DNA of 64,000 bases, from contig NW_002060945.1 of assembly GCF_000150275.1 (NCBI RefSeq), forward strand, positions 9,006,011-9,070,010, read 5' to 3'. The translations under genes and the position numbers were made by a program. The notes under the pieces are model-generated. The model was not told where the DNA came from. It saw nothing but the letters and a program-made list of their open reading frames with translations, and did not search any database. Source of the stretch: Trichoplax adhaerens (taxonomy: Eukaryota > Animalia > Placozoa). Of this stretch, positions 23,701 through 42,590 are shown in pieces; within the stretch, counting starts at the first letter, position 1; each line of letters begins with the position of its first letter.

Positions 23701-26700
23701 TTAAAAGTTAGTGTTAAGTCAGACAAGCAGCTTGATCAATAGCAGAGAGATATCGGTATAGCTACCCCAATAAAAATTATTAACCATCATAGTTATAAAC
23801 GTAGCCAGTAAATCATAATTATTATCATTAGGAAGCAGGAGATACACATGTAGATTATTGAAAAGATATTATGAGAATCTGGTATTTTGTACATCTACCG
23901 GACTGCATAATATTGTTAATTGAGTTTATATGAAGTAATTCAAGATTTTTATATGATTAGAATAGGCTTTGCTTTATTTGCTTTACTTAACTAGTGTCGC
24001 ATTACTATAGCTTCAAAATAGGAAGAAACCGGGAATTTACTAGGGAGTCATGGAAATAAACTGAAATTAGCTCTGAATTTGGTTCAATTTTAGAAAAAAA
24101 TTAATATTTCCATTTTTGGCTTAGCCATATCGTGAAACGGAGTTTAATAATGAAAATTGCATGCTACAGTTCACGTACTTACAAATTAAATGGTGATATC
24201 CTTGCAAAGGATTTTTTAACTGAATATTAACTACCATTGATAGTCATTCTTTAATCTTTATTGGCACTATTGTCCTGCCTTGCTACTAAATAAATTGACA
24301 AACAATCCGTGCCATGCAATTTGTTATTTCTTTCTTTACTCACAGACCAAGTAACGTAGTAATAAGGCAGTAGATGATTTTTAACCAAATATTAGCTACT
24401 GATTAATGTCTATTCCTGAATATTTATTTAATTTATAATAGAGCATCTGTTCTTAAATGGGCAGATAATCGATCAATAGTGTTCTTAGTAAGATCGCCTT
24501 GCTATGACTATGGGATTGAGAGGAAATCGCACTTAACAATCGCAATTTTTATGTATCTTTTCCTATCGTTTTCATCAAAATAAAGCATTCATACGGCTGA
24601 ATTCATGCCTATCATCGGTGGCTAATTCTGCAATATTGTATTACCTACTGTGTCCAATATCAACTAATTCCAAGTAGAACGACTAGAATGTTTGGGATAG
24701 TTTAAGTCTAATTGTAATCATATTGATTAAATAATATTAGCATAGCTTTGCCTTTCAATGGACTGACTTTTGTGCTATAATTTTAATTGATACAAATTTT
24801 GCTTGGGGTTGCTATAGCATTAAATGAAATCTTGGGATATTTGAAATTTTTAAACTCCCATTCTACGATGTTTATTAAGATGTAAAGAAATGATTACTTA
24901 AGTATCGGCTAAAAAATATCTAACATTTACCATTATGAATAGGGATAATATTGATAATGAATATAACTTTTTGGAATAGTCGTAAAATATTGATATTTGG
25001 ATTATAGATAAGCTTAAGAAATACGGAAAACAGGAAAACTTAAGGGGAAAGATTATCTTGAATTGTTATAAATATCTCAGAAAATTGATTGACATGAATG
25101 GAACGAAATAACTGCTGGCAGTAGAAATTGCTAAGGGACTTTGATAATTATAGAATAGACTATTGCTACTGTATAATAGACGTTTCATGGAACGAATAGT
25201 TTCTAGTATTCAATCCGCTCGCTAAAGTAATCAAAATAAAATCAATTAGCAATAGAAAGAACTTCTCATCAAAATCTATGTTATAATTTTCTAAGATTTT
25301 CATTGAAGAAGATCCTCCCATTTAATTGATGGAAATCAAGTAATTTAAGTTATTCTATATCTTCGCTGTGTAAGTTGTCGCCTAATATAATAAATAATCT
25401 GCCTAGCTAAAGTAATCGCTTACATATTTACTCTGACCTAAACTACTTCTAAGCATGCGAATAACATAGTCTATTCATTTATGAATTATTTCTTTCCGCT
25501 TTTAGTTTCAAAACATGATTACATGATATTTAATAAGTCATTATCACGTAAAGTGTACATACTATATATAGACATTTAGCTTCGTATAAATTTCGTAATG
25601 TGAAAAGGCAAACATAAACCTTTGTAAAATTTTAATATAACTGTACCAAAATAGTGGTAGTGCCTGTCAATTGGAGCAAATTGGTTAATTCTACTAATAT
25701 AAGTGCTACAATTATACTACCTTATAGACAGAATTCGTGGAAGAGCTAAAGAATTCGCGATGATTCTCAGATAACTTGCGTAATCAATATTCGATTGTTT
25801 TTACTTTTGATACTCGGTAGACATATTACTGTATATGAATTTTGCAATATCGATATAGCAAGCCTAAATTTTTACAATATTAATAACAAATAATACTCAG
25901 GTAAAATCATGTTGGCACTTGTCTGTATACTATGAGAATCCTGCTTGATTCATTTTATGCACTTTTGTATGCATTCTATTCGGTAATATCTAATTGTAAT
26001 TTTGAGTATTACTATCAAAAAAATATTTTAAAAATTGATAGACTTAGTAAGTAACATAATTTTATAAGAAAAATAAGTCAATACCAGTGTTATCATTACT
26101 ATTATGTTGTACTTACAATGTGTAAGTTAAGGATTGAACTACACAATATTTATCACAGTTGAAGAAAGTTTAAAATTCAACATAATATTGATCAATAGTC
26201 GAATATCTTTTCGATTAGATTAATCTTGACGAAGATGCTAGATTAGATATACCTGAAAACAGTTTATATTTATGGAATAAATTTCTAGTATGGTTATTGT
26301 TCGGTTAAAGCAGTAATTATTATCAATATTTCAAATTTCGTCAATCCGGTTAATTATGTGGTTGAAATGATATGGATCAATAAAATAATCCAATATATCT
26401 GTAATTATTTACTGCTATAGCAATATTCGTTTGAGAGGTCAAAAAATTGTAATGAATTTAATTAGCCTAAAATAAAAATATCGCCGATATAATATATCTT
26501 CTGTATAATAGCGAAAATGATTAACTAATTAATACGTTTACCAAATTTTTATGTAATTTATCAAATTCTGTAACAATCTTTTCAAGTTAGGAGCAGCAGC
26601 TTGATATAACCAAGAAAGTAACGAATCAGCTTCAGCAATTACATAAATGTCGTCACCACTGTGATGAGCATCACTACTTCAAATCTGTAGAAAGAGTTGA

Positions 26701-27870
26701 ACTATAGATTATCTACTTAGTCGATGGTAAATCTCATAGCAATTCTCTACAACGTCTTTTGCGGCTGTAGTGGTCGCTATTAATCGTTTAATAACAAATT
26801 ACTATTTCATGTAAAGTAATAGTAATAATCGAGCTAATCAATTATTTTGATGAATTATTCAATGATTTAACAGTTATTTTAGAGTGCATGTTTAAAATAG
26901 TAGTCAGTCAATCTAGCCATAGTGAATTTTACTGTTGATGAATTATTAGAACAAACCGAGGAAGTGTAAGATACCCTTGCTACTGTTTCTTAACAATGAC
27001 AATTTAAGTAGCTTTTACGTATGATATGTTTTATATCCTATTCTCGCTGTATGATCTATCGGTCGTAAAGTAAAGGTTAATCAAATAACGTACTGAAGGC
27101 CAATGCGATTGATTTCTCATTTTTAGCAAAGGCACTCAAGATCTGAAGGTTTCCGTATATTGTATCGTGATGGTAAAATAATCAGCTAAATAGTACATTA
27201 ATGGCGCTTTTAATTTACTTACAAGATATAATAAAATACCATATTACATAAAATTCTCGCTTTTGGTATGTTATGGTAATTTTGCAAGACTTGTTTTATC
27301 CTGCCGTAGGTCTACTCGTAACATAAATTCAAAGGTTAACTTAAAATTCTATTTAGCTCACGTCTATTGCAATCTGCAAATCGTAAAAAAGTATAGTGTA
27401 CTATTATATATAATGATCCCTAGTTATTTAGTGTATTTATAATGACGTATTATTTTCCTGTAGTAGGTTTACCAATAATGTATTGAATGCTTAATTCAAT
27501 CTTGCCTTAGCTTTTTCCAATTTAAGAAATAACTTCCGTTAATGACGTAGATCATTGAATCTTTGTTAAGCTCAAGTGATCAGCCAAACAAAGATGGACT
27601 TCGACGGAACTAAATTAAAATTTTCTGAGGATATTTCCATCTCAAGAGTTGGTATCACGATCGCACTCTAATATAGTAGCCTTGGTGTAGAGTAAACATA
27701 GACCGCAGTTAAGAAAACGAAATAGTTGTGTTTATTCACGAAAAAAGTTTTCGCAATCAACGCTTAGTTCAAATACGTTGCAATCAAAATTGTAAGGTTC
27801 ACCTTAATCGATGTTAACTTGGTCATAATATTAAAAACTCTCCTCGTCATATTTATTTAACGTAATCAAG

Positions 27871-28503
27871 TGTTACAGTGTTAAATACTGTATTACAGTA
27901 GAAATAACTATGTTAGGATAATTCTGTTAGACTATCCTTATTTAGTTAACTTCTAATTTGGATATACTGTATTTTAATATAGCACTGACTTTTTATGACA
28001 GTGACACTTATACACATACTGAAATTATAATAGTTATAATAGGGAATGCAAATCATCTGCTTACAGTTCGAATCATTGTGATTGTAATTTACTTATGATA
28101 GACTGTAAATTATCATGGAGATGTTCCGTGATAGGACATATCGTAATCTGACTATTCTGTATTAGTTATTACATGTCTATGTTCGTAAATACTGTTGTCT
28201 GCATTAAGAGAGCAGTAGCTAAAATTAATATCTAATTCAGTAAATGATTCTAATGTTAATTGTATTAACTATGACTCATGAACTATTGAGGAATAGTATA
28301 TAAATGCAGTATATCGTGAAATAAAGAAGAATTGTCCAACTTAGTGTTTAACGTAAAATACGAGGCGTTTAAGTCTTTGTGTAGTCTGCTAGTAGAGCAA
28401 AAGTGTTTGCGATAGTGCAGATATCGTTCCTTGATACGTGGTTCAAGGAATTGACTTATTGATCGTATATTGCGTTATCTTGTTGCAAAGCTGTTTTGTG
28501 ACA
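27871..28503 (+). mobile_element. Solo LTR, 633 bp, 5-bp TSD TCAAG
   Basis: Termini TGTTACA...TGTGACA; TCAAG at 27866-27870 and 28504-28508; internal TGACTCA 28272, TATATAAA 28297, AATAAA 28320; near-identical reverse-complement copy at 41958-42590. Confidence 0.9.
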
Positions 28504-31500
28504 TCAAGATTAAGAATTGTTTGGCTTGGTTGTAAAAAAGAATAAGCTAATTGTCTATAGGTCAGGTAAAAGTCATTGTTAGGGTAGATACTATTTTCAT
28601 TCTGGGAATATGGATTCATTATATTTTTACTGATAGATATGAGATTTGATGAATTGATATCCAGTTTGATATATAACAGCTTAAAATTAATAATATAGAT
28701 AATCAACTTTGCAATCAAGTTTTGTTTAACTTATTATCAATTGTCAATAAGTTTTATGTATTCATGTTTAAACTTAGTTTCATCTTATATAGCATTTATT
28801 GTATTAACGGGCCTAAATTGGAGTAAGTAAATAGGGAAGAATGGTACGGTTGTTATCAAATTTTATGCATTATTTAATTATAAGCATTTCATGGCATAAA
28901 TGCAATTTACAGGTAATCATACGTATTAAATTTTTACATCATTTAAATGGCTTTTTGCTATTGAAGTATATTCATATCAGGATTTCATTCTAAGATATAT
29001 GATTTCATTGAATCCAGAATGATGAATTTTATTACATTAATCTTGTATTTGCGCCTATTATCAATGTCTACGAATCAACGGATCGAATTTGAAGATCGAG
29101 GAAAATGGAATTCGACGAAATATTTCTAATTTAGACTGAATTACCATCATTTGCAGTGTCCTCCATAGTCTAAGAATATTTTCTTGACTAGTTCTCAAAT
29201 AGTACTACGCTACAAATTATTGAGTCGTAAGTGTGCAGCATTGAATAAGTAACAGAACGGCTTAAAAGACAATTTTATGTACGATCTATTTGCAAGAATA
29301 CTCTACCAATATTGCTTGGTAATAGTAATTTGACCTACAAATGCGACAATCATTTATATACTTAAAATAGAATAGATCATTTATTCTGTAAAGGTAGTAA
29401 TACTCCATCTATTGCCTTATTTTGTCTTTCTCTTCTGTTCCATATACGTCATACTAAGAAGAAATAGTGTATACTTCAATTGGATGACATTGTTGTTAAT
29501 TTCAATGAATGATAAAAATTCACCAGGTAAACGAGGCATGTGCGATTTGTCAGGTCCGACTACTTGAATGATTCAACAATAGGATTTGCATATAACATTC
29601 TCTTTGGATAATAGATGTTATAACAAAAGACAACAGCAACACATAAAATTGATATAATTACTAATTTCACCTGGACCATAGGCTAAACAATACCTTGCAG
29701 ATAGATGACCATCAAGTTATCGCCAAAATCGAGTAAATAGTAGTTAAACGTGTAATTAAAAACTAGGTAAAAAAATGAAATATTTCCAGAAAGTATATTA
29801 TGTTTAGCTTGAGAATCATTGTCCATATGCTTTATTTGATTCACAAAGTTAGGTTACTATTTTAAAGTAACGCGAGATAATAGCCAATATAGAATACTAA
29901 TAGAGTTGTTAATGAATTTTTTATTTCATCCATCATCATCTCTGATCTACTAGCTACATGTCAGTGATTATAGAAGTAAAATAGGAGTAGTTGCTGTCAG
30001 TTGTTCGTTATTAGCCAAGATTATGTATAATATTTTAGGTATATGAATTAAAATACAATTTGTAATGCTAAAAAAATGAATAGATTTAGATACACAATTT
30101 ATCCTTTCAGTATTTTGTTTATGGTATTATCATCGCTAGATAACTTAATTTTGTAGCTTGCTACCTTCGTGATCATGTAATGGGAAAGGAATGATCTTAA
30201 ATCTTTCGTATAGAAACTATGAAAGGAGACAGGTTACTCTAGTTATAGCTATCTCATCAAATTTGTTGCTTTAGATTACTACTTTCTACAAATAAATATT
30301 ATATTACGACTACATAATGAATAATTAACAAGTTCATACATTCATATATTATATCATCAGCAGTCTTAGAAGCGAAATATGAGTTGATCAAGTAATAGTG
30401 ATTTGCATTTCTTCGTATAAATTGAGGATGAAAATGGTGAAAAGAAAACAGAAGTTAAATAATCAGAATATCCAAAAGACCTGCTGCGTAAAATGCCGTT
30501 TACCATAAAGAATAATATTTCGACTTTTATTTTAATCATACAATACTACAAATTTTGCGTAACATCTAAAATAATTAATATAATCGTACCATCAATCTGA
30601 AGCAATGGTTAATAATCCATGCAGAAGATGTTGAGGTCAACATTATTTTATAATGTCTTTGTTATTCGATGGGATGAATAAGAAACTTGAAATGCATTAA
30701 CTAAACTTCACTTTTTCAATTTCCTTTGCATGACAAATATAGATGTGCATATAATTACTTCTAAATATTCATGTGTACATATATCTATAACACACCTATA
30801 TAAAATAAAAATAATTGAATGGTATCATAGAACAGAAATTCAAAAGATTAAAACCAAATGATTGAATTGAGACTATTTCCAATTCTATATTCAGTGAATA
30901 CTGATACATGCCATATATTCTATTGGCTTTATTAAATGTTTTATTTCTATCTTATCTTATCTGCAGCTGCTAAATATGATTTATTTTTTAATGTCCAATA
31001 TAATAATAATAATACTAATAGTAATAATAATTATATCGATTGCTTAATGACACTTTCGTCTACTTTCTTTTCACAGTAATCTCTATCATTACTTTGCCAG
31101 ATGTTCCAAATACAATTTAATTTAATCAATAGTGAGATCGATAGATGACACGTATAGAATATGTATGTGTGCTCATCTGTAAAATTGAAAACATCTTTAA
31201 ATTACTAATAATGTTAGCAAAATTACTTCTCTCACCCAATTTTTTATCTGACCTTGATGAGTTGGAAGTAAGATGCTCCTCTCAAAAATGACATTGTGCA
31301 GTTATTACTTTACTGTGAATTAAATAATAGAGTATTGCTGATTGAAACTTTACAATTCAAAACTTGACTGCTATTATCCTGATTCCTACTTGATATTGTT
31401 AGGCCATCGTATCCGGATAGGCATTTACAATTAACTTTTACTTAAAGAATATCGAACACCAAAGCAAATTGCTATGCTTTACAGTATCAAGCTTTCGATT

Positions 31501-32611
31501 TTAAAGCACTGATATCGATATGACAATCAAATGAGTATACTTTTAAATTAACCTATATTAAATTATTAACACATTAAATTACGGAGTACTTTTAATTTTT
31601 CTTGTTTTCATTTAATGAATGTTCAAATGTATTGATGTAGATGCTTTACAATAGGATATATTCGCCAACTGATTACAGTTTATAATTTCTCTTGTGTATA
31701 TTAATTTGCCAAATATATGCCGTTTACTGATTAGTAATGTGGATACTACCATATAATCTTTATATAGTATATATATGTATGGGTTACATGTATAATATAT
31801 ATGAAATATACTGTAGATTTTAGTGTGATATATTCATCTATCCATCTATCTATCTCTCTATATTTCTCTCTGTATATATGTATTATTGTTTTATAGTTAT
31901 ATCTATATAAATATGTTTATATATTTCTGTATATCGTGAATATATACTTGTTCTGTGCTTGTATTTTGTATACAGTATGCGCAAATGGATATTTCTAATA
32001 ACATAACTAACAGCCATAGTAAACGAATACAACAGAATTTACAAGTATGAATAAGTCTATGATCTAAAATGTTGATATGAAATATTTGATAGTCAGAAAT
32101 AAGAATATAGAGTGAGAAAAGTCAAGGTGTTGAAGGAGAAAATGGAATGATTAGACACGTGTAAAAGATTTTTATATTATTTTATCGCATAATAAATTAG
32201 AAATTGTTAATATATTAATGTTTAGCCAAGCTATCATAGAACATGTTTGGCAAAAGCATATTTTATTTATGCTCAAGCAACATCAAATTATTCGTCATTG
32301 CTATATGATATATTGTCGAATAACATCATTTTCGTTATTGTATTTCCGTATGATTCCACTTTTTTTTAAAAGCTATCTTAAATATTGATCACAAAGGTTC
32401 TGATTGGATTTTATCCAGCAGTTCGTTTTAACAGCAGTTAAGATAAATTAATTATGTATCGTTGGTTTTATACTAGTATTATATAGACTTATACTGATAG
32501 TTTAAATTGAGACTAAATGTTTAAAACAAAAATACTAAAGATGCGGTTGATTCCATATCAACATCTAATATAGTGTTGTCGATATTTGATCTGCTGTAAT
32601 TTGAAAATTTT

Positions 32612-32896
32612 TCACCTTTTCTGGCTCTGATGATTGTCGGTAGTTTGTAAAGTTTGTTGTAAGAAATCGATATACATTATAGCTAAGCGTAGTATTTCAA
32701 AAGGTGTTATGTCAGTTTCTTCTTGAAATGTTGGTACATGGCGTTTTAACTCCTGGATTGCTTGATCAATTTCTAAGTATGTCTCATCATCATTCTCTGC
32801 TGTTAGACATGTAGCTTGATGCTGAGAAATTTGTTGCTGTAAAAATTCTTTGTAATTTAAAGCAACTTGTCCAGTCTGTAAGTCAGGGATTCGCAT
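32612..32896 (-). CDS. 94-aa helix-loop-helix protein of PTF1/Fer type lacking the basic DNA-binding region (acidic instead)
   Basis: IDQAIQELKRHVPTFQEETDITPFEILRLAIMYIDFLQQTL aligns without gaps to the class A HLH consensus IN.AF..LR.HVPTF..E.RLSKI.TLRLAI.YI.FL...L. Intact single ORF with aaaATG start; minus-strand AATAAA near 32262-32267. Confidence 0.85.
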   Translation of the reverse strand: MRIPDLQTGQVALNYKEFLQQQISQHQATCLTAENDDETYLEIDQAIQELKRHVPTFQEETDITPFEILRLAIMYIDFLQQTLQTTDNHQSQKR

Positions 32897-33267
32897 TTTG
32901 CACAGTGAATTTTAATCGACTTTTGATATCAATAAGTGAAGATAAGCAAGATAAAGGATATATTGACCTGTCGACTAGCCTACTTTCTCTTGATTAGGCT
33001 TAACTGATCTGGTAAATGTCTACAGACGGTTCTGACAGCAGGTTGAATTGCTACTTCTATCGCTAGGATTATGACCATGAGATGTACGCTGTCGATTAGT
33101 TAATTTTTAGTAGATTTGGTATCGATTTTCCAACTGTATTAAAACTTGATTTGACCCAAATGTCTTAATTTAGTATAATACTATTGAAGTTGAATAATTC
33201 CGATTCAATCAATATGTAATAGAATGAAAGTCTTAATATTTTCGATCACTAGATAGGAAAAGAAAAA

Positions 33268-36200
33268 CAGCTGTAGGTTAGAGTAGAAAACGATTTAAAG
33301 ATAGACAGACTACGGGTAGTTTAAATTAGTTGGTTTGATTCTATTGATGAAACGATGGAAATGTAAATAATACTAGTGGAGCAAAATGATGGCTAGGCCG
33401 TTACATGATTTTAATACCACGATGAAAATAAAGACTGAAGAATATAGTGTACATATTGATCAAGGCAAGTACGAGCAAATTTTCGACCTTTATCACTATG
33501 TTGCCTACAGTATGTACAATCTTACCTTAAGAATGATAATAATAATCGCACTTGGATAGAATAATAGGCAATTTTTAGCTGGATGAAGGGGAAAAGATTT
33601 GATCACTAATAATGTGTCGACGTTTGGTTTTATATCCTTTCTTTTTTTTCAACGGTATCAATCATTTAAGTCGCTACCAGCTGATGTAGACGTCAAAACA
33701 GTTACAGGAATTAGGCGTAAATTTAAGGCTAGAAATGGATGGTGTTACCATAGGCGAAGTTGGAAAGGAATGAAGAGCAGCTGTTTGTACCAATGGGTAT
33801 TTGTGCCACTAAATTTAAAAATTTTTGTATTATGTAATATCATGAAATAAAAAATTATACATCCGGCTACAGGTGCGCTGTATTGTGTACTGTCCAGATG
33901 CCAAAATGTGCATAATAACTTTTGCTTCATTGTCCATTCAGATGCAATGTTGTCTATTGTCATTAGCCGGCTAGCAATAATAGTGTGTGTGGATAGTAGA
34001 TGGAGAGTAGAGTTGTATAGTTGGCAACGATTAAGAGGATGGAAAATAGTTTAGCGGTCTTGCCATAGCATAAAGCAACATCAATAGTTGTAAGCTATAC
34101 AAATCGATACAATTTACAACTATTGAAATGGAATGGGCCTGTAGTTGCATCTTCTTCTCGATCCATCTCTCCATACGTCTGGGCAACACTTTTCTGTCTG
34201 TTCCTCTCATTGAAAGAGGTGTGGAATTAAGCTAGCGATTTAATGGATGTTATTGTTGCAGAGAGAGAAAGTTCTACTGTCGATACAGGTAGTATCGATT
34301 AGTAGAGTCTGTTGGTTGGTAAAATATTGGATATTAATTAACAATCGAGCTTATTCTTTCCACTCCAATCTATACAGTAGATATTGATCCAAACGATGAC
34401 GTATTGATCTACATTCGATCTTACTGCTTGAATTAAGTCTCTTATTGACTCATGAGTCTATCCTTCATCTGGAGCGTAATAAACATTTTCCCTATCAAAT
34501 TGATTTCCTGTTGACTAGTAAAATATTACAATTTAGATATAGATAGGTAATAATAGTATTAATACTTTCTGTACAGATTTATCGTCATCATCATCATTAC
34601 GCTTCAATAAATAAAAAAAAGGGAGAAAAAATACAGCAAGATCATCTTTCCATTTTATTGGTTAATATCAATGTTTACAACTAAATACGAGCTAGCCTAA
34701 ACGATTCAGGCTAATGAAATCGATCTATTCGGGCTTAAAAGAGGAGTGATGAAAAATAGGACTGGTCATACGCAATAAAATCCATATGACAAATAGCATT
34801 TATCTTAATCGAATGAAACACAACCATTCCGCAACACATAGTTCAAGGTAAAGTGTTTAGGAATCATTGAATTAGCATCATCTTCAATTTTTAATTAATA
34901 CAGCTGGATACAATCATGGATCGCTCAATTTTAAATAGGTAAAAGGACTACTTTTTGTTAACCCGCCTTTAAAAAATTAAATTTTATTCTGCCTTTTTTA
35001 TAATGTGTTGATTTGTAGATCTAATATATGGCTACACTCCCACGATGTTAGCTACAACTGTAGTGTAACCTCTCTTCTAGTCAATTTCGACACTTGTATT
35101 TGTCTGGTACCTATTCTATTTACATCATTGTTTCCTTAGCTATCAAACAGTAAAATATACACAGGTGCATTTGTTAAAAAAATAAAATATAATAAAATGC
35201 GACTATCAGTTTTATCCGTTGTATGTTACTATTATGCAAGATAAAAAAATTGGGGTGCCTTTTAAATAATTGATCATCCATTGATGTTCTTCAACTCATG
35301 TATGGGATATATACATCTTCAAGATATTGTTTTTATTTAATATTTATTTTTATTTTCTATACTTTCATTCAACATCTATTATTTCATCTACTGATGTCAT
35401 CTGTATATCTATGATGGAGGAATTTTATTCTCCAGCTGGACACTTTTACCCTTATGGAATGAAATTATTAATCGAATTTGCTTATCAAATTGATAAGATA
35501 GGATGACTAAAAGGGCTTCTTGAATGCATAGATCACGAATGACAATCTACTATAGAGCAATAGACGACATAAAGCATCTACTTCAATGACTGTCCTAACC
35601 AAGACCGTGGATGAATGATGAGTAGGTAAAGCTAACTGCCAAAACATTCGATTTAATGTACGAACAGATGATATTGAAGAGGGCAGAAATGTTAATGATG
35701 ATAATTATTGGAATGGGGTTTATTCTCTAATAATAATAATAGCAAAGGAATTGAAAATATGAAGAATTCTATATTAGCTCGTAATGAATGCATTCTTGTA
35801 TAACAATATATGATGAAAAGTATCATTCACTTTGTATTTTCAGTGAATTTCAACTTAATGTTTAATATTTATTAGGCTACTCACTATTCTATACTATCCT
35901 TGCTCAAGACAAGAGGTTTTAAAAGTTAATATTTATAATGGTTAATCTCTTTGCTTTTTATCAATTTGAGTCCTACTAGCTGGCATGAGAATGATTGCCT
36001 GCCACCATAAGTATTGGATAGATTCTACCGTAGTGTATTATATATAATGAAAATTGTCCGTACATAAACCTAGCTTATAGAATCAAGTAAATTATAGATT
36101 GAAAATTGATTTTGGATCTTAAATTATAGCTAATCAACTGCTAGCAATGCTCTTTCTTCCATGTTCATTTTATTAAATCATCTGGCTATAGTTAATATCT

Positions 36201-36488
36201 GATGATAGATTAATCGTTGTTGTTCATCGCTAAGGGGAAGTTAATAGAATGATCAAAAGAAATACATTTATGTTTAATATAGTGACGTTGTCATAATTTT
36301 CTAAGACTATTTTTATATCGCCATATGCCATGGCAGAATAACAACCAGCTGTCGCTAAATATGATAACTTTTGACATATGCTCTTTAGTAATAAATTATA
36401 CAATATTCTTTTTTGTTTTACTTATTGCTTCGATAGACCATCTTTTATTAATAAGTCTATAATTGTATTTTATTTTCAATTACAGGTG
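33268..36488. promoter_or_regulatory. Cluster of class A E-boxes upstream of the HLH gene
   Basis: CAGCTG at 33268, 33678, 33778, 34901, 35433, 36346; CAGGTG at 33870, 35162, 36483; CAGATG/CATCTG at 33895, 33939, 34466, 35398. Confidence 0.45.
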
Positions 36489-39400
36489 AGAGAAAGTTTG
36501 TATGGAAAGAAGAATAACTAATTTTCAAATGTTAGATAGATGGAAATTAATGTTATAAGTGTAGAGCACTATTTTGTTTCATATCAGGAAAGTTTAATTT
36601 TTTTTGCCGCTACAAATTCTTCATTTCCAATATCTTCCAGTCATGAGCTTATCAACTTCTTATCCCCATTAAAAATTAGTACAAACATGTATTTATTTTA
36701 GTCCAAGGGAGTGTATAAATGCAAATTGAATTTTTGCCATCAGTGCAATATACAAGTTTCATTCAACAGTAATCTTTGGATCGTATTGCAATATCTCTAG
36801 CTGTGACAAGATATTGACCTCAAATAGGATTTATAAAATATTAACTTATGACGGTATTGAAATAACATAATGACCAAAATATAAAGATGATAACCATTGG
36901 TGTTGACCTGGAGGATAGGTAAACTAACAAAAATGAGCTCATGTTGACCAGTACTCCTGGTCAACATGGTGTAATAGATACTCATTTACCTTGTTAGTTA
37001 GTTGGTTGCTTACTCAACAACCTATGTTGATATCATTTTCCATTTAAAAATATGTTGAAATAATTGATTGATTGATTTGGCTTTTCATTGAGTAAAGCTC
37101 ATGAAGGGATAGACAAGCATATTGACTCTTTCTCTTAGACTCAATAATAATATCCCTCAGTAATTCCTTTCTATAATCAAGACAAAAGTTCACTTTGTTA
37201 AAGTGTACAAAACTGATTATTATTCATTAAAAATTGATGCCGTTTCATGGATTGCATTACACGTGTTGTTTTGTTGGTAAACTGTAGCACATTTTCACAC
37301 ACCTTCTACTTTAAAATTGACCACCTGCATATCAGTTTCTTTTCTTGACAATGTAGAAGTATTATTATGTTGTCTAATTTGTTAGACATTCACTATACAA
37401 ATGACAATCTGGCTAATATTAAAATATAATTTCCTCTTGTTGCCTATACATTGAGTGCTCATCATTTATCTTGGACGCAAAAATATGCAGTAAAATTTAG
37501 GGTTAATTTTAATTTTAGCCATTGAAATTGCTTATTGGAACATATATCAATGATAATAACAATAACCACTATAGCAGTTAGAATACAATATCTGCATTAA
37601 ATAAAATATATCGTGTTTCCACTATAAAATAAACTTAGATATTACTACTTTCTCTTTCTCTTTTAATGGAAAAGTATGTTAGGAAATGAAAAGGAAGTTT
37701 CTATTCAGTATTATAGACTTATGGCTATTGTTTTATTACTAGCTGTAATTGTCCTCAACTGAATTTATTAACCTTATACAGCAAGCTAAGAATCTTGGTT
37801 CGATTTCCTGAAAATCTGTATTACAGGTTGATAATTATGGAGTAAATTAGAATGGAATATAGACTCTAGACATTGAGATGATTTCACATCGTTAACATTT
37901 CATTAGCCATCGATCTATGTAGACATCTAGTATTAAATCATCTAGCAATATTGGTAATAGTGACTACTGTCAATTAATCATTATTTAGTTAACACTAAAA
38001 TTAGATACCGAAATGGTAATCAATTGTATAACTCTTATTATGGAGTAAGTAGATGAAAAACAAATACGGTTATACATGATAAGGCTTATGATATTTCGGG
38101 AATATAGCCGAAAATCGGGTAACTAGCGTTCATAAACTAATTCGACGGCATAGTCATATCCAGTAAAGGATGGAACGCCTGCTACATTCCTAATTGAGTT
38201 GAATGCATCTTAGGTTGTTGACAAATTTTGTTTAGTTTTCATCGGATTCGGACAATAAAATAACATTTGTTCAGCGTCACTAAGCATAATATGCGAATAG
38301 GATTCTAGCTAAATAGTTCAATTCATAATTTTATCCATCATTTATTAGGTGTGTTTTTATCTATCTCCCTCATAACAACTATGGGAATTGCCACATTATT
38401 TTTGATTAATTTTATGGACTGAAGGTTACGGTTTTTATTTATATTTTTTAATTCGGCGGGAGGGGGAAATTATAACCGTAAATTACTTTTGTGTATCATC
38501 ATTTACTATCAATGTAGTAATCCAGAGGGTTGATGCAAATTCGAAGCAGGTGTCGCATGAGTGGGAGTGGCAGCATATGTCTAATATGTCAACAAATACT
38601 TTCATTTCCCTTTGATTCGGATTAAATGATCGATTGAAAGGTGACTATTAATCGAATTTTATTTTAGCTAGAGATATAAGTATCTTCTAATACATTGCTT
38701 CCTGAACAATGGAATAGTTAGGGACGAGTAGAACTTATATGAATAAAGCTATGATAGAAATTACTTTTATTATTATTAAATCCTGATATAAAAACAGAAT
38801 TAAAAATATTGATACCATCATGTATCATTTTTTGGGCTAACTAGATCTAGTCCAGATGGAATCATGATACACAGTCTTATATCAATAAAGTCAGAATCAT
38901 AACGATAGACTGTTATTGTCGATTGTCTGCAAATTAATCAACCAAATATATTTGATTAGCTAACAATTCCAGCATAGCATTTCATCAATTGGAACTTCAG
39001 CGGACCACGTGGACTATTTCCTAAACGATTATATTACAACAAAAAAGTCTTTTCGTAGATAATTATCGACAAAATATTTTTCTATATTATATTACGAAAT
39101 ATTCTCCCACTATCGATAATGTTTGATAAATCTTAGGGTAATAATTATCCGATATATCAACTCAGTCTTTATTTCAGGCAATTTCCCTTTAAATATGTGT
39201 TAATAGTTTGCCTTAGTAATTCAGTTATTTTCCTTGCGATGAATCAAGACTGATTAATTTGCATTTCTAGACCGTTATAAATAAATTTTTGTATAAAACA
39301 TGCGCGGTAGATGTATTACCACGATGAATAAGGATAGAGATGGCAGTATTAGATAGCGTGCAAAATATAGGAAAGCAGATATTACCTGTAATTGATTTAC

Positions 39401-41957
39401 CCTTCAAGTGAATCTGTTAAAGATATTATCATCCTTTAGCATTGTAGTCTTTGTGAAATATCATAAACTTTGCTAATATTAGAACATAGAGTGCTTAAAA
39501 TTGTAGATAACATTAAGTATGAACATCTGCCGATGGAAATGAAATAATTAATATGAATGATAAAGTTTTTATGAGATAGCGTCATTGATGGATGATGAAG
39601 GAATAAATGTGTTAATGTATTATTACATTTTTTAATAGTAAATTCTACAGGAGTTGTATCGTTGTAGCGCAATATTATAGTTTACCTAGGAACTATGTGG
39701 TGTATTAAGCATTTCTTCGTAGTGCAAATTCTACTTTATTCCGTATTTTTATTTATAATTAATTATTTATGCTAATATATGGAACTTTCATTATTAGACT
39801 TCACGAAGGCCTATTTATAATAACTATTATTAGAAAATAGTTTATTAAATATTTGGTGCAGTAATTCTTTGTATTATATTCAAATTTATCTAAACAGTTT
39901 GGCGCCGGTATTAATATACAATATTGATCATAGTACCATGTTATTACCCACTTAGAAGATCAATCACAATTTTTCTCTACTAGAGTCTTATGTCGTCAGG
40001 ATTAATTCCACAACTTGTAACAACAGTCACCCTATCGCACAGCTATAGCACTCGTGCTATAAAGTAATATTGCCATAAAATTAACTAACCTGACGATACC
40101 AACAATTCTTGAAATAAATTTTGATTATAAAATCTAATTGACACACTGTGTACACCAAATTAAGGCACAATCAGTGTAGTCAACTTAAACTAACTGGTTT
40201 AAAGGGGTGCATCGTTGATATCGACTAGGAATAAAATATCAGTATCTTACTATTTCATAATACTATTGAAACGACGAAATCCATAAAAACATTAATGTAT
40301 TCAACTCATAGAGATAAGATCTCAAAAGAATTGTTATATGATAAAGTCCTATTATAGGCTATTAGCTCTATTAATCAGGCTTTGTTAAGTAAAAATAATG
40401 AAATAGCTTTTGTTTTAGAATGTTCATCAATTCTAAAATTTTAAGCTGTCCTTTCTTATTAATGTAATCAAGCTTATCTGGAAAAAACTGAAAACCCAGA
40501 AGTATTTAATCTCATACCAATACAGATTGATATTTGGCAAGGATAGCTACTATTTGTAACTATGATTTGTATATGTTTATACAACCTGAAACTTCTCGCT
40601 TAGTGGATTAATAGCGTATCGGTAATCACGATTATGATATAACCCAATGGCGAAAGGAAAGCCTCGAAAATTTGTATTGTTAACATGTCGATCCAAATGT
40701 TTCATCTTTAATAACCAAACAACATTGGACTCTCCAGTTATAGTTTGAAGTACAAAATAATTTTTATAATTAGCCTTTGTAATTAATTCCTTTAAATTTC
40801 CTAAATTAATTTATAGTAATGACATGAAGTAATCAAATTACAACTGCATGATCACTTATCTTGATGTATCTTTAAGGCTTAATTCAGTAATTATATCAAT
40901 TAAACGATTCCATACTATTGCACTCATCTCTCCAACTTACTACTGTATCATACGACAACAGTGTTTAAAATTAAAGAGTATATTGTAAACCTATAAAATT
41001 ACAGCAGCCGAAAATGATCACACCTGTCAATGTATTGCTGATGTATGCTATTACTTCAGTTTAGATTTGAGATTTATCATTCTTCAACCAACGATGAACT
41101 ATGAAATAGCAATTATTGATGGAGGAATACCGGTGCGCTACCGTATGACATATAATTTCATAACATCTTTTAAGGTGTAATGTTATACAAATGAGGTTAT
41201 ATAAGTTACTTTCAGTGTTATATAGAGGCGGAAATTACAAGCTTCCTACTTGATGAGCACTATATTGCCTAGCATCAGTAAATATTCTAAGGTTATTCCA
41301 ATAGATTTCATGCTACAATATATAATACTGTAATTGATTCGATTCAATGATGACTCCAAAGAAAGAACTGCTATCATCCAGAGTGTGCAGATGATTATGA
41401 AGGTTGCCGTATAAATTCTCGTTAGTAGATCTTTTAAGTTTGGTATACATTGGTAATATGTTGTTTGATTATAAAAGTAATTAAATTATGATTATAGTAG
41501 GCCTATACTAATTTTTAGCTTATTTTTGTTGCACTTTCGAAATAATGATGAAATCTCGATAATATAGATTTAATTAAAGTCAAAATGAATGCATGTTTAA
41601 AATATAACCTATTTCTTGACAGCTTTACAACGTGAATAATATATTCTAATTTACTGTCATGATACTTATTATTTCATAGATAGATTAATCTTTCTCAAAT
41701 ACCGTTCCATTATTCAAACATCTGGAATGAATTAAATTATTAACAATAGAAAACGATTCTCGTTATGTTGTTGTTATCAGCTATCAACTAATGAGATTGC
41801 TGCATATTAAAGATTTATTTCTACTATTTTATTAAGATATCGACTTATTATGTTAATTAAACGAGTTTATGACTCGCTCCAGATGTTTAATATATTAGAA
41901 AATAATAATTTCTGCTTCTTGATAATATATTTTTAATTTGATTCACAGATAGACTAC

Positions 41958-42590
41958 TGTCACAAAACAGCTTTGCAACAAGATAACGCAATATACGATC
42001 AATAAGTCAATTCCTTGAACCACGTATCAAGGAACGATATCTGCACTATCACAAACACTTTTGCTCTACTAGCAGACTACACAAAGACTTAAACGCCTCG
42101 TATTTTACGTTAAACACTAAGTTGGACAATTCTTCTTTATTTCACGATATACTGCATTTATATACTATTCCTCAATAGTTCATGAGTCATAGTTAATACA
42201 ATTAACATTAGAATCATTTACTGAATTAGATATTAATTTTAGCTACTGCTCCCTTAATGCAGACAACAGTATTTACGAACATAGACATGTAATGACTAAT
42301 ACAGAATAGTCAGATTACGATATGTCCTATCACGGAACATTTCCATGATAATTTACAGTCTACCATAAGTAAATTACAATCACAATGATTCGAACTGTAA
42401 GCAGATGATTTGCATTCCCTATTATAACTATTATAATTTCAGTATGTGTATAAGTGTCACTGTCATAAAAAGTCAGTGCTATATTAAAATACAGTATATC
42501 CAAATTAGAAGTTAACTAAATAAGGATAGTCTAACAGAATTATCCTAACATAGTTATTTCTACTGTAATACAGTATTTAACACTGTAACA
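41958..42590 (-). mobile_element. Solo LTR, 633 bp, 5-bp TSD ACTAC (same family as 27871-28503)
   Basis: Reverse complement of 27871-28503 with about five substitutions seen by eye; TGT...ACA termini; ACTAC at 41953-41957 and 42591-42595. Confidence 0.9.

What the first reader, a model, noticed from the sequence alone, without database searches (positions are those of the whole stretch)
32612..32896. Natural 'acidic HLH': PTF/Fer-like dimerisation domain with DNA-contacting charges reversed
Seen: the positions of the basic RERxR motif read NDDET (AENDDETYLEID), and there is no Lys/Arg from residue 17 to 50. The loop EKRLSK consensus reads ETDITP, losing the conserved backbone-contacting Lys, while the hydrophobic dimer core (AI..L..HVP, ILRLAI.YI.FL) is intact. 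No PTF1a-type C-terminal Trp motifs are present. Established: Id/emc proteins inhibit E-proteins by lacking a basic region, and engineered dominant negatives use an acidic extension to zip onto a partner's basic region. Inference: the sequence resembles PTF/Fer (HVPTF, LRLAI.YI) more than Id (LVP, LQHVIDYI), so this may be an independently evolved, DNA-mimicking bHLH inhibitor. With the E-box cluster, it is the best candidate here for an undescribed regulatory system.
Basis: partly seen in the sequence, partly recalled or inferred. Interest (0 to 1): 0.8.

Follow-up and report, generated by a model that had tools for sequence, protein, structure and literature searches.

The report
Placozoan HLH protein without basic region
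A small, well conserved Trichoplax gene encodes a helix-loop-helix dimerisation domain of the PTF1A/FERD3L type whose DNA-contacting basic residues have all been replaced, mostly by acidic ones. It is therefore most likely a home-grown, Id-like blocker of bHLH transcription factors in an animal phylum that has no Id gene.

Summary
Window 32612-32896 (minus strand) is a 94-aa ORF of Trichoplax adhaerens (TRIADDRAFT_55034) with a significant Pfam HLH match that covers helix 1, loop and helix 2 only.

- **Charge.** The 13 positions aligned to the basic region hold no Lys or Arg, with net charge -4. In 22 comparison bHLH domains the same positions hold 4-8 Lys/Arg, with net charge +2 to +7. The loop charge is reversed too.
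- **Conservation.** Two other placozoan genomes carry the same 94-codon ORF with the same start and stop. dN/dS is 0.09-0.13, and 0.09-0.13 over the N-terminal 41 codons. DNA similarity stops about 10 nt before the ATG.
- **No hidden exon.** An in-frame stop lies six codons upstream of the ATG. No bHLH-type basic motif is found anywhere in the window, so a spliced-in basic exon is very unlikely.
- **Kinship.** The nearest relatives are PTF1A- and FERD3L-type proteins, not Id. Najle et al. 2023 already list the gene as 'like FERD3L/PTF1A', and their placozoan catalogue has no Id. My trees could not resolve its position.
- **Mechanism.** A dominant-negative role is inferred, not shown. The acidic 'zipper' idea is untested.

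The scan also noted an acidic, basic-less HLH in a different Trichoplax gene (s1-784906). I rate this a new variant of a known kind, of moderate interest.

The parts
32612..32896 (-). Complete 94-codon coding sequence plus stop of the basic-less HLH protein (TRIADDRAFT_55034 / TriadT55034)
   Evidence: ORF. Pfam HLH. 100% match to P0001. Same start and stop in L003 2379-2663 and L033 315-599. dN/dS 0.09-0.13.
32816..32896 (-). Codons 1-27, a strongly conserved N-terminal motif (MRIPDLQTGQVA..YKE.LQQQISQ) of unknown role
   Evidence: dN/dS 0.04-0.09 at dS 0.5-1.8. AF2 predicts a helix at residues 13-35 with low confidence.
32774..32812 (-). Codons 29-41, the 13 positions aligned to the bHLH basic region (TCLTAENDDETYL): no K/R, net charge -4
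   Evidence: Alignment and charge table. Acidic residues at 34, 36 and 38 (and at 42, in helix 1) are kept in all three species. dN/dS about 0.2 for codons 28-45.
32735..32773 (-). Codons 42-54, helix 1 (EIDQAIQELKRHV)
   Evidence: Pfam match begins at residue 42. AF2 helix at 41-53.
32702..32734 (-). Codons 55-65, the loop (PTFQEETDITP). Acidic where relatives have EKRLSK, and the conserved Lys is lost
32645..32701 (-). Codons 66-84, helix 2 (FEILRLAIMYIDFLQQTLQ)
   Evidence: Pfam. AF2 helix at 65-92. Foldseek top hits are all bHLH chains.
33735..33944 (.). Conserved non-coding element 840-1050 nt 5' of the ATG, with three conserved class-A E-boxes (33778-33783 CAGCTG, 33870-33875 CAGGTG, 33895-33900 CAGATG) and a TATAAT. 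Probable promoter or enhancer of the gene
   Evidence: 89.6% identity over 212 nt to L003, with a core almost identical. Equal tblastx scores in all frames plus a 1-nt indel indicate non-coding DNA. Densest E-box cluster in the window, P about 0.01.
32137..32260 (.). Conserved non-coding block 350-470 nt 3' of the stop (probable 3'UTR or regulatory element)
   Evidence: blastn to L003 and L033. The alignment has indels and stops in all frames.

Best explanation
This is an intact, translated, single-coding-exon gene for a 94-residue HLH-only protein, so far seen only in placozoans. It arose from the PTF1A/FERD3L (48-related) branch of class II bHLH genes and lies 46.6 kb from the Trichoplax PTF1A-type gene on the same strand. 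It kept the dimerisation helices. It lost every DNA-contacting basic residue of the basic region and the loop Lys, and most of these became Asp or Glu. Shown here: the anatomy, the conservation and the kinship. Inferred: it dimerises with the placozoan E-protein (TCF3/4/12 orthologue TriadT8076) and/or with PTF1A/FERD3L, and the resulting dimer has only one basic region, or a repelled one, and cannot sit on an E-box. It would then act as a dominant-negative titrator, as Id/Emc do in other animals, in a phylum whose catalogues hold no Id. The conserved E-boxes in its upstream element suggest that bHLH dimers switch it on, which would make a negative feedback loop. That last step is also inferred.
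For: HLH domain significant, basic part of the profile unmatched. 0 K/R and net -3 to -4 in the 13 basic positions in three species, against +2 to +7 in 22 comparators. ORF with the same start and stop in three placozoan genomes, dN/dS 0.09-0.13, 0.09-0.13 for codons 1-41, and most differences at third positions. DNA similarity begins 10 nt before the ATG and ends 1 nt after the stop. An in-frame TAA lies six codons upstream of the ATG and there is no AG between them. No N-x-R-E-R-x-R-like motif in any frame of the 64-kb window. The PTF1A- and FERD3L-type paralogues carry basic region and HLH in one exon. Nearest relatives in 1.84 billion representatives are of PTF1A and Fer3/N-twist type. Closest paralogues in the genome are L011 (FERD3L-type) and L005 (PTF1A-type, C1412:9085467-9085619). 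Najle 2023 supplementary file 4 lists TriadT55034 as 'like:FERD3L/PTF1A' with orthologues in four placozoan species, 3-4 gene numbers away from PTF1A in three of them. The same file lists a TCF3/4/12 orthologue and no ID1/ID4 entry. No Id-like locus appears among the 28 HLH hits in the genome. Foldseek's best hits are bHLH chains. Upstream conserved element with three conserved E-boxes.
Against: No transcript, expression or interaction data could be reached, so dimerisation and inhibition are pure inference. The acidic segment is the least constrained part upstream of the C-terminal tail (dN/dS about 0.2). Two of its acidic positions vary (D37G, D44H), and net charge of the whole protein ranges from -8 to -3 among species. 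AF2 confidence is modest (mean pLDDT 67). The trees leave the clade unresolved inside group A, and AU tests do not prefer PTF/Fer over ASC or Atonal-like placements (p 0.09-0.10). The JGI and H2 models give a different C-terminus (122 aa) through a donor that overlaps the stop codon.
Confidence: 0.6

Rival explanations
1. Non-inhibitory cofactor. The protein dimerises through its HLH but serves as an adaptor or positive partner. It might bring the strongly conserved N-terminal motif (residues 1-27) to a DNA-bound complex, or give a heterodimer half-site specificity, in the way SCL/TAL1 can work without its own DNA contacts.
For: Residues 1-27 are as constrained as the HLH core (dN/dS 0.04-0.09), which simple titration does not require. 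The best solved-structure match is TAL1.
Against: Nothing recognisable lies outside the HLH. The loss of all basic residues together with charge reversal in the loop points to avoidance of DNA. Id proteins also carry conserved flanks.
Confidence: 0.2
2. Hidden bHLH. A basic region is supplied by an unrecognised upstream exon spliced to the AG at 32773-32774, in all transcripts or in an alternative isoform, so that the protein is an ordinary DNA-binding bHLH.
For: An AG is present at that spot in all three species. A 5'UTR intron is plausible.
Against: The 41 codons upstream of that AG are under purifying selection in this frame, with a conserved ATG. The AG is just codon 41's third base plus the GAA of E42, and it follows purine-rich sequence. 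No bHLH basic motif occurs in any frame of the window, including the 31 kb upstream. The related paralogues have no intron there. Conservation ends 10 nt before the ATG.
Confidence: 0.05
3. Decaying duplicate. This is a redundant copy of PTF1A/FERD3L that lost its DNA-binding residues by drift and is on its way to becoming a pseudogene, or it is a mis-called ORF.
For: Long stem branch. Ab initio gene model. Expression was not verified here.
Against: The ORF is intact and of identical length in three genomes separated by dS 0.4-1.3, with dN/dS about 0.1. Orthologues are listed in four placozoan species. Conserved non-coding blocks flank it.
Confidence: 0.03

Closest known systems
PTF1A and FERD3L/Fer3/N-twist (PTFa/PTFb, '48-related' class II bHLH, group A)
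   Same: Helix 1, loop length and helix 2 are most similar to these proteins (HVPTF, LRLAI.YI.FL). They are the best hits in an exhaustive search. The closest paralogues in the genome are of these types, and the PTF1A-type one is linked at 46.6 kb. Published class: 'like:FERD3L/PTF1A'.
   Different: No basic region (0 K/R against 5-6). The loop EKRLSK is replaced by EETDITP. There is no C-terminal Trp-bearing RBPJ-binding motif, since the protein has no Trp and ends 12 residues after helix 2. The whole protein is 94 aa. Monophyly with PTF/Fer is not resolved.
Id1-4 / Extramacrochaetae (group D HLH inhibitors)
   Same: An HLH without a basic region in a small protein. The expected mode of action is titration of E-proteins and class II partners.
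   Different: The HLH sequence is not of Id type. The orthologue profile scores Id1 at 14.3 bits (E 0.36), below TAL1, Twist1, ASCL1, NeuroD1, Myf5 and SREBP. No Id chain appears in the single-sequence PDB search, and no Id-like protein appears among the library hits. This indicates an independent origin. The ex-basic segment here is net acidic.
Engineered acidic-extension dominant negatives (acidic Max, aMip, A-ZIP designs)
   Same: Acidic residues stand where the basic region was, next to an intact dimerisation module. The concept is described in PMC7780693.
   Different: The natural stretch is far less acidic: 3-4 D/E in 13 positions, against an almost all-acidic designed 17-mer. It is only moderately conserved. 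AF2 predicts a break at residues 36-40, at low confidence, so it may not continue helix 1. No evidence shows that it pairs with a partner's basic region.
Plant atypical HLH inhibitors (PRE/ILI1, KIDARI, PAR1 types; from general knowledge, not tested here)
   Same: These are non-DNA-binding HLH proteins that arose independently from DNA-binding bHLH ancestors and act by titration. They are a precedent for convergent origin.
   Different: Different kingdom and a different bHLH lineage. No sequence comparison was made here.

Membership tests
HLH superfamily (Pfam PF00010) | Significant match to the helix-loop-helix profile | tested here: met
   30.5 bits against a cut-off of 20.7, E 3.1e-7, profile positions 15-53. 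Foldseek top hits are all bHLH chains, with probability 0.85-0.99 for the top twelve and weak E-values, as expected for a small domain.
DNA-binding bHLH (groups A/B) | Basic region with the E-box-contacting residues (N/H-x-x-E-R-x-R pattern, at least 4 K/R) | tested here: not met
   0 K/R in the 13 aligned positions in all three orthologues, against 4-8 in 22 comparators. Only the Glu-equivalent stays acidic (D36).
PTFa/PTFb (PTF1A, FERD3L) families | HLH sequence closest to PTF1A/FERD3L | tested here: met
   The single-domain best hits P0008, P0010, P0011 and P0012 (35-39 bits) are of Fer3/N-twist type. P0004, P0005 and P0007 are of PTF1A type. TAL1 reaches only 24-26 bits. Najle 2023 class it 'like:FERD3L/PTF1A'.
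PTFa/PTFb (PTF1A, FERD3L) families | Forms a supported clade with PTF1A/FERD3L in a phylogeny | tested here: inconclusive
   The orthologue clade has 100/100 support but sits on a long stem in an unresolved group-A polytomy. AU tests: p 0.088 (with PTF/Fer), 0.087 (with ASC), 0.10 (with Atonal-like). No Twist, Hand, SCL or Id rows were available by reference.
PTF1A proper | C-terminal Trp-containing motifs that bind RBPJ/RBPJL | tested here: not met
   There is no Trp in the 94 residues, and only 10-12 residues follow helix 2.
Id/Emc (group D) | HLH without a basic region | tested here: met
Id/Emc (group D) | Id-type HLH sequence and orthology | tested here: not met
   Id1 scores 14.3 bits (E 0.36) with the orthologue profile, behind seven chains from six other bHLH proteins. 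It is absent from the single-sequence PDB hits at E up to 10. The published orthology is to FERD3L/PTF1A.
Id/Emc (group D) | Binds E-proteins and blocks their DNA binding | not testable with these tools
   This needs co-IP or two-hybrid tests and EMSA. No multimer prediction tool was available.
Acidic-extension dominant negatives (functional analogy) | Acidic helix continuous with helix 1 that pairs with the partner's basic region | tested here: inconclusive
   Net -3 to -4 over 13 positions. The AF2 monomer model shows helices at 13-35 and 41-53 with a break at 36-40, and pLDDT 54 for residues 31-40.

The most novel reading that the evidence does not exclude
Placozoans, which have no Id gene, evolved their own bHLH inhibitor from a PTF1A/FERD3L duplicate. 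Its conserved acidic residues do more than remove DNA binding: they pair with the partner's basic region, a natural counterpart of engineered acidic-extension inhibitors, and so give tighter and more selective inhibition. bHLH dimers induce the gene through the conserved upstream E-boxes, which closes a negative feedback loop in the peptidergic-progenitor programme where PTF1A and the E-protein are expressed.
Probability: 0.2. Interest if true: 0.75.

Novelty: new variant of a known kind. Interest (0 to 1): 0.5.

Why it matters
HLH-only inhibitors (Id/Emc) are central brakes on bHLH-driven differentiation. In the surveys read here, the published family tables list none in sponges, and the published placozoan transcription-factor list has no Id entry. 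A separately derived, conserved HLH-only protein in placozoans would show that this regulatory logic was invented more than once in animals, as it was in plants. It would also give a simple handle on the PTF1A/E-protein programme of placozoan peptidergic progenitor cells. If the acidic patch really engages partner basic regions, it would be a natural precedent for a protein-engineering trick. All functional claims remain to be tested.

Tried and rejected
- **Upstream basic exon.** Rejected on codon-level conservation of residues 1-41, the in-frame stop upstream of the ATG, the end of conservation at the ATG, and the lack of any N-x-R-E-R-x-R-like motif in six frames of the window.
- **The 72-aa ORF at 33745-33963 over the upstream conserved block as an exon.** Rejected. 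A 1-nt indel shifts the frame between species, and tblastx scores are equal in all frames.
- **The 3' conserved block at 32137-32260 as a second coding exon.** Rejected because of indels and stops.
- **Rfam scan of 30000-37000.** No hits.
- **Transcript evidence from Logan/ENA contigs.** L004 is identical to the genomic contig L003, and L033 is collinear with it. They give no splicing information. Look-ups of the Trichoplax proteins themselves returned nothing.
- **Phylogeny.** Two trees and three AU tests left the family position unresolved. The named alignment in Fortunato 2016, supplement 2, could not be brought into a script without typing it in, so that step was left out.
- **Lead from an earlier scan note (E-box + ATGATAT + TATA promoter module of peptide genes).** The composite GCACCTGT-N10-40-ATGATAT occurs 9 times in the genome against 7 for the control, which is chance level.
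- **Literature.** Text searches for the gene identifiers found nothing. Gyoja 2014 is not held.
- **Spliced model.** The 122-aa spliced JGI/H2 model was handled only by its protein id.

Full report
**What is there**

The minus strand of window 32612-32896 holds a 94-codon ORF. It scores as a Pfam HLH domain (PF00010, 30.5 bits against a cut-off of 20.7, E 3.1e-7). Only residues 42-80 match, and they match profile positions 15-53. The part of the profile that models the basic region finds nothing.

The genome is Trichoplax adhaerens. The ORF is 100% identical to the first 94 residues of TRIADDRAFT_55034 (XP_002111267, UniProt B3RQL8, a 122-aa ab initio model). Trichoplax sp. H2 has the near-identical TrispH2_005726. 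The window is G000:C1412:9006011-9070010.

**Check of the observation**

- There is no Lys or Arg between K16 and K51.
- In an alignment with 15 complete Trichoplax bHLH domains and 7 foreign PTF1A/Fer-type domains, the motif R-E-R-x-R falls on N35-D36-D37-E38-T39.
- The 13 basic-region positions read TCLTAENDDETYL, with no K/R and net charge -4. Every one of the 22 comparators has 4-8 K/R and net +2 to +7.
- The loop reads TFQEETDITP (net -3) where PTF/Fer proteins read TFPYEKRLSK (net +2).
- The core positions A46, L50, P55, L69, L71, I73, Y75 and L83 are invariant with PTF/Fer relatives.
- The protein has no Trp and stops 12 residues after helix 2.
- An AlphaFold2 model (mean pLDDT 67) shows helices at 41-53 and 65-92. 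Foldseek's best PDB matches are all bHLH chains: SCL, NeuroD1, Myf5, MITF and MyoD. Probabilities are 0.85-0.99 for the top twelve, with weak E-values as expected for so small a domain.

**Is it a real, complete gene?**

Two further placozoan genomes carry the same ORF. These are P0002 on ENA contig L003 (2379-2663) and P0013 on Logan contig L033 (315-599). They are 82% and 79% identical in protein. Each is 94 codons long with the same ATG and the same stop.

- DNA similarity to L003 begins 10 nt before the ATG and ends 1 nt after the stop.
- Differences fall 11/7/30 on codon positions 1/2/3.
- Nei-Gojobori dN/dS is 0.13, 0.09 and 0.10 for the three pairs.

| Segment | Codons | dN/dS |
|---|---|---|
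| N-terminal motif | 1-27 | 0.04-0.09 |
| Acidic segment | 28-45 | 0.18-0.22 |
| HLH core | 42-82 | 0.04-0.06 |

The 41 codons that would be intron under the 'hidden basic exon' idea have dN/dS 0.09-0.13, so they are translated in this frame.

Several further points argue against a hidden exon:

- An in-frame TAA lies six codons before the ATG, with no AG between them.
- The AG at 32773-32774 is the last base of codon 41 plus the first base of the conserved GAA (E42), and it follows purine-rich coding sequence.
- The PTF1A- and FERD3L-type paralogues carry basic region and HLH in one exon.
- A six-frame regex scan of the whole 64-kb window finds no bHLH-type basic motif. This includes the 31 kb upstream on this strand.

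I therefore take the 94-aa product, starting at 32896, as the real protein.

The 3' end is less certain. The JGI and H2 models splice from AG|GTGAA, which overlaps the stop codon, to a 28-codon exon at 30711-30794 whose product looks like junk. The heptamer AGGTGAA is present in all three species, but the orthologue contigs end before that exon. This does not touch the HLH or the acidic segment.

**Kinship**

An exhaustive phmmer search of 1.84 billion representatives gave 11 proteins at E up to 1e-3. After the orthologue they fall into three groups:

- PTF1A-type: P0004, P0005, P0007.
- Fer3/N-twist-type: P0006 (Culex 'n-twist'), P0008, P0010, P0011, P0012.
- Two others: P0003, a Caenorhabditis brenneri protein with repeated HLH units, and P0009, which I did not examine.

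Several top scores are inflated by duplicated domains. The single-domain Fer-type hits score 35-39 bits. Solved structures score lower: TAL1 24-26 bits and Twist1 about 21. With a profile of the three orthologues, Id1 reaches only 14.3 bits (E 0.36), behind TAL1, Twist1, ASCL1, NeuroD1, Myf5 and SREBP.

Within the Trichoplax genome the closest paralogues are L011 (FERD3L-type, C1410:7663644-7663796) and L005 (PTF1A-type, C1412:9085467-9085619). L005 lies 46.6 kb away on the same strand.

Independent support comes from the literature:

- Najle et al. 2023 (PMC10580291, supplementary file 4) class TriadT55034 as 'HLH.HG2.37:like:FERD3L/PTF1A'. They list orthologues TrispH2_005726, Hhon_g09440 and HoiH23_PlH23_002459.
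- In the three species with serially numbered gene models, these lie 3-4 gene numbers from the PTF1A orthologues (005730, g09437, 002456), so the linkage is kept.
- The gene was also in the alignment of Fortunato et al. 2016 (PMC5064789, supplement 2) as Tadh_fgeneshTA2_pg_C_scaffold_3001041. It is listed there next to sequences I did not recognise as belonging to a named family, and its 'basic' columns read LTAEND-DETYL.

My own trees are not decisive. The orthologue clade is solid (100/100) but sits on a long stem in an unresolved group-A polytomy. AU tests do not separate placement with PTF/Fer, ASC or Atonal-like rows (p 0.09-0.10). No Twist, Hand, SCL or Id rows could be added by reference.

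**Context**

All other HLH loci found in the genome by the Pfam profile have ordinary basic regions, or their basic region is cut off by an intron, and none looks like Id. Najle's placozoan transcription-factor list has a TCF3/4/12 E-protein (TriadT8076) but no ID1/ID4, TWIST1 or TAL1 entry. The same paper names Ptf1a as a marker of peptidergic progenitor cells. An earlier scan note (s1-784906, s1-784836) reports another basic-less, acidic HLH in a different Trichoplax gene that joins an HLH to an HMG box. I did not test that.

The gene lies in a stretch (about 24-42 kb of the window) with no other plausible long ORF.

A conserved non-coding element lies 840-1050 nt upstream of the ATG, at 33735-33944. 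Its core is almost identical to L003. It is frame-independent and has a 1-nt indel. It holds three conserved class-A E-boxes: CAGCTG at 33778, CAGGTG at 33870 and CAGATG at 33895. With two non-conserved E-boxes nearby, this is the densest such cluster in the window: 5 in 300 nt, with P about 0.01 for such a maximum. CANNTG as a whole is not enriched in the window, at 212 sites against 203 +/- 13 expected. A second conserved non-coding block lies 3' of the gene at 32137-32260.

**Mechanism**

Shown: a conserved protein with an intact class-II-type HLH and without any of the basic contacts.

Inferred from established bHLH biology: such a protein can still dimerise. A dimer with a single basic region does not bind an E-box, so the protein should titrate its partners, as Id/Emc do. 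The likely partners are the E-protein and/or PTF1A and FERD3L. I give this 0.6.

The stronger idea is that the acidic residues pair with the partner's basic region, as in engineered acidic Max (PMC7780693). This idea is open:

- The acidic character at positions 34, 36, 38 and 42 is kept in all three species.
- Positions 37 and 44 vary.
- The segment is the least constrained part upstream of the C-terminal tail.
- It is much less acidic than the designed extensions.
- AF2 predicts a break at residues 36-40, at low confidence.

The tight constraint on residues 1-27 is unexplained and leaves room for an adaptor role. The upstream E-boxes suggest control by bHLH dimers, and so feedback, but nothing here tests that.

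**Novelty and verdict**

The gene is catalogued, and its PTF1A/FERD3L affinity is published. In the papers I could search, I found no mention that it lacks the basic region or that the charge is reversed. Gyoja 2014 could not be read.

HLH-only inhibitors are a known kind. An independently derived one from the PTF/Fer lineage, in a phylum without Id, is a new variant of that kind. Interest is moderate (0.5) because the anatomy and conservation are firm while every functional step is still inference.

Noticed in passing
window 33735-33944: Upstream conserved non-coding element. About 140 nt are almost identical between Trichoplax and a placozoan that differs by 18% in the neighbouring coding sequence. 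It holds three conserved E-boxes (CAGCTG, CAGGTG, CAGATG on the + strand), a TATAAT, an ATTGG, and a possible GTAAC donor that would make a 5'UTR exon.
   Followed up: partly
window 32137-32260: Conserved non-coding block 3' of the HLH gene, shared with L003 and L033. It contains a CACGTG in Trichoplax (CATGTG in the others) and AATAAT-like words. It may be a 3'UTR or an enhancer.
   Followed up: partly
window 32610-32616 and 30711-30794: The heptamer AGGTGAA that spans the last codon and the TGA stop is kept in three species. The JGI and Trichoplax sp. H2 models use it as a splice donor to a 28-codon exon at 30711-30794 with a junk-like product. It is unclear whether this splice is real.
   Followed up: partly
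window 24000-42000: About 18 kb around the HLH gene has no other ORF of 70 aa or more that looks coding. This is a gene-poor setting, typical of developmental regulators. Further weakly conserved blocks lie at 34216-34526 and 34929-35143.
   Followed up: no
G000:C1412:9085467-9085619 (L005), 15 kb beyond the window's end: PTF1A-type bHLH gene on the same strand, 46.6 kb from the basic-less HLH. By gene numbering the linkage appears to be kept in three other placozoan species.
   Followed up: partly
P0003 (Caenorhabditis brenneri CAEBREN_11271, 606 aa): A protein with five HLH repeats, of which only one has a basic region. It may be a real multi-HLH protein or an assembly or annotation artefact.
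   Followed up: no
window 32816-32896 (residues 1-27): The N-terminal motif MRIPDLQTGQVA..YKE.LQQQISQ is as constrained as the HLH core and has no recognisable family. A Fer3-type protein (P0010) has a loosely similar GEVQLPYEEYL before its bHLH, which may be chance.
   Followed up: no
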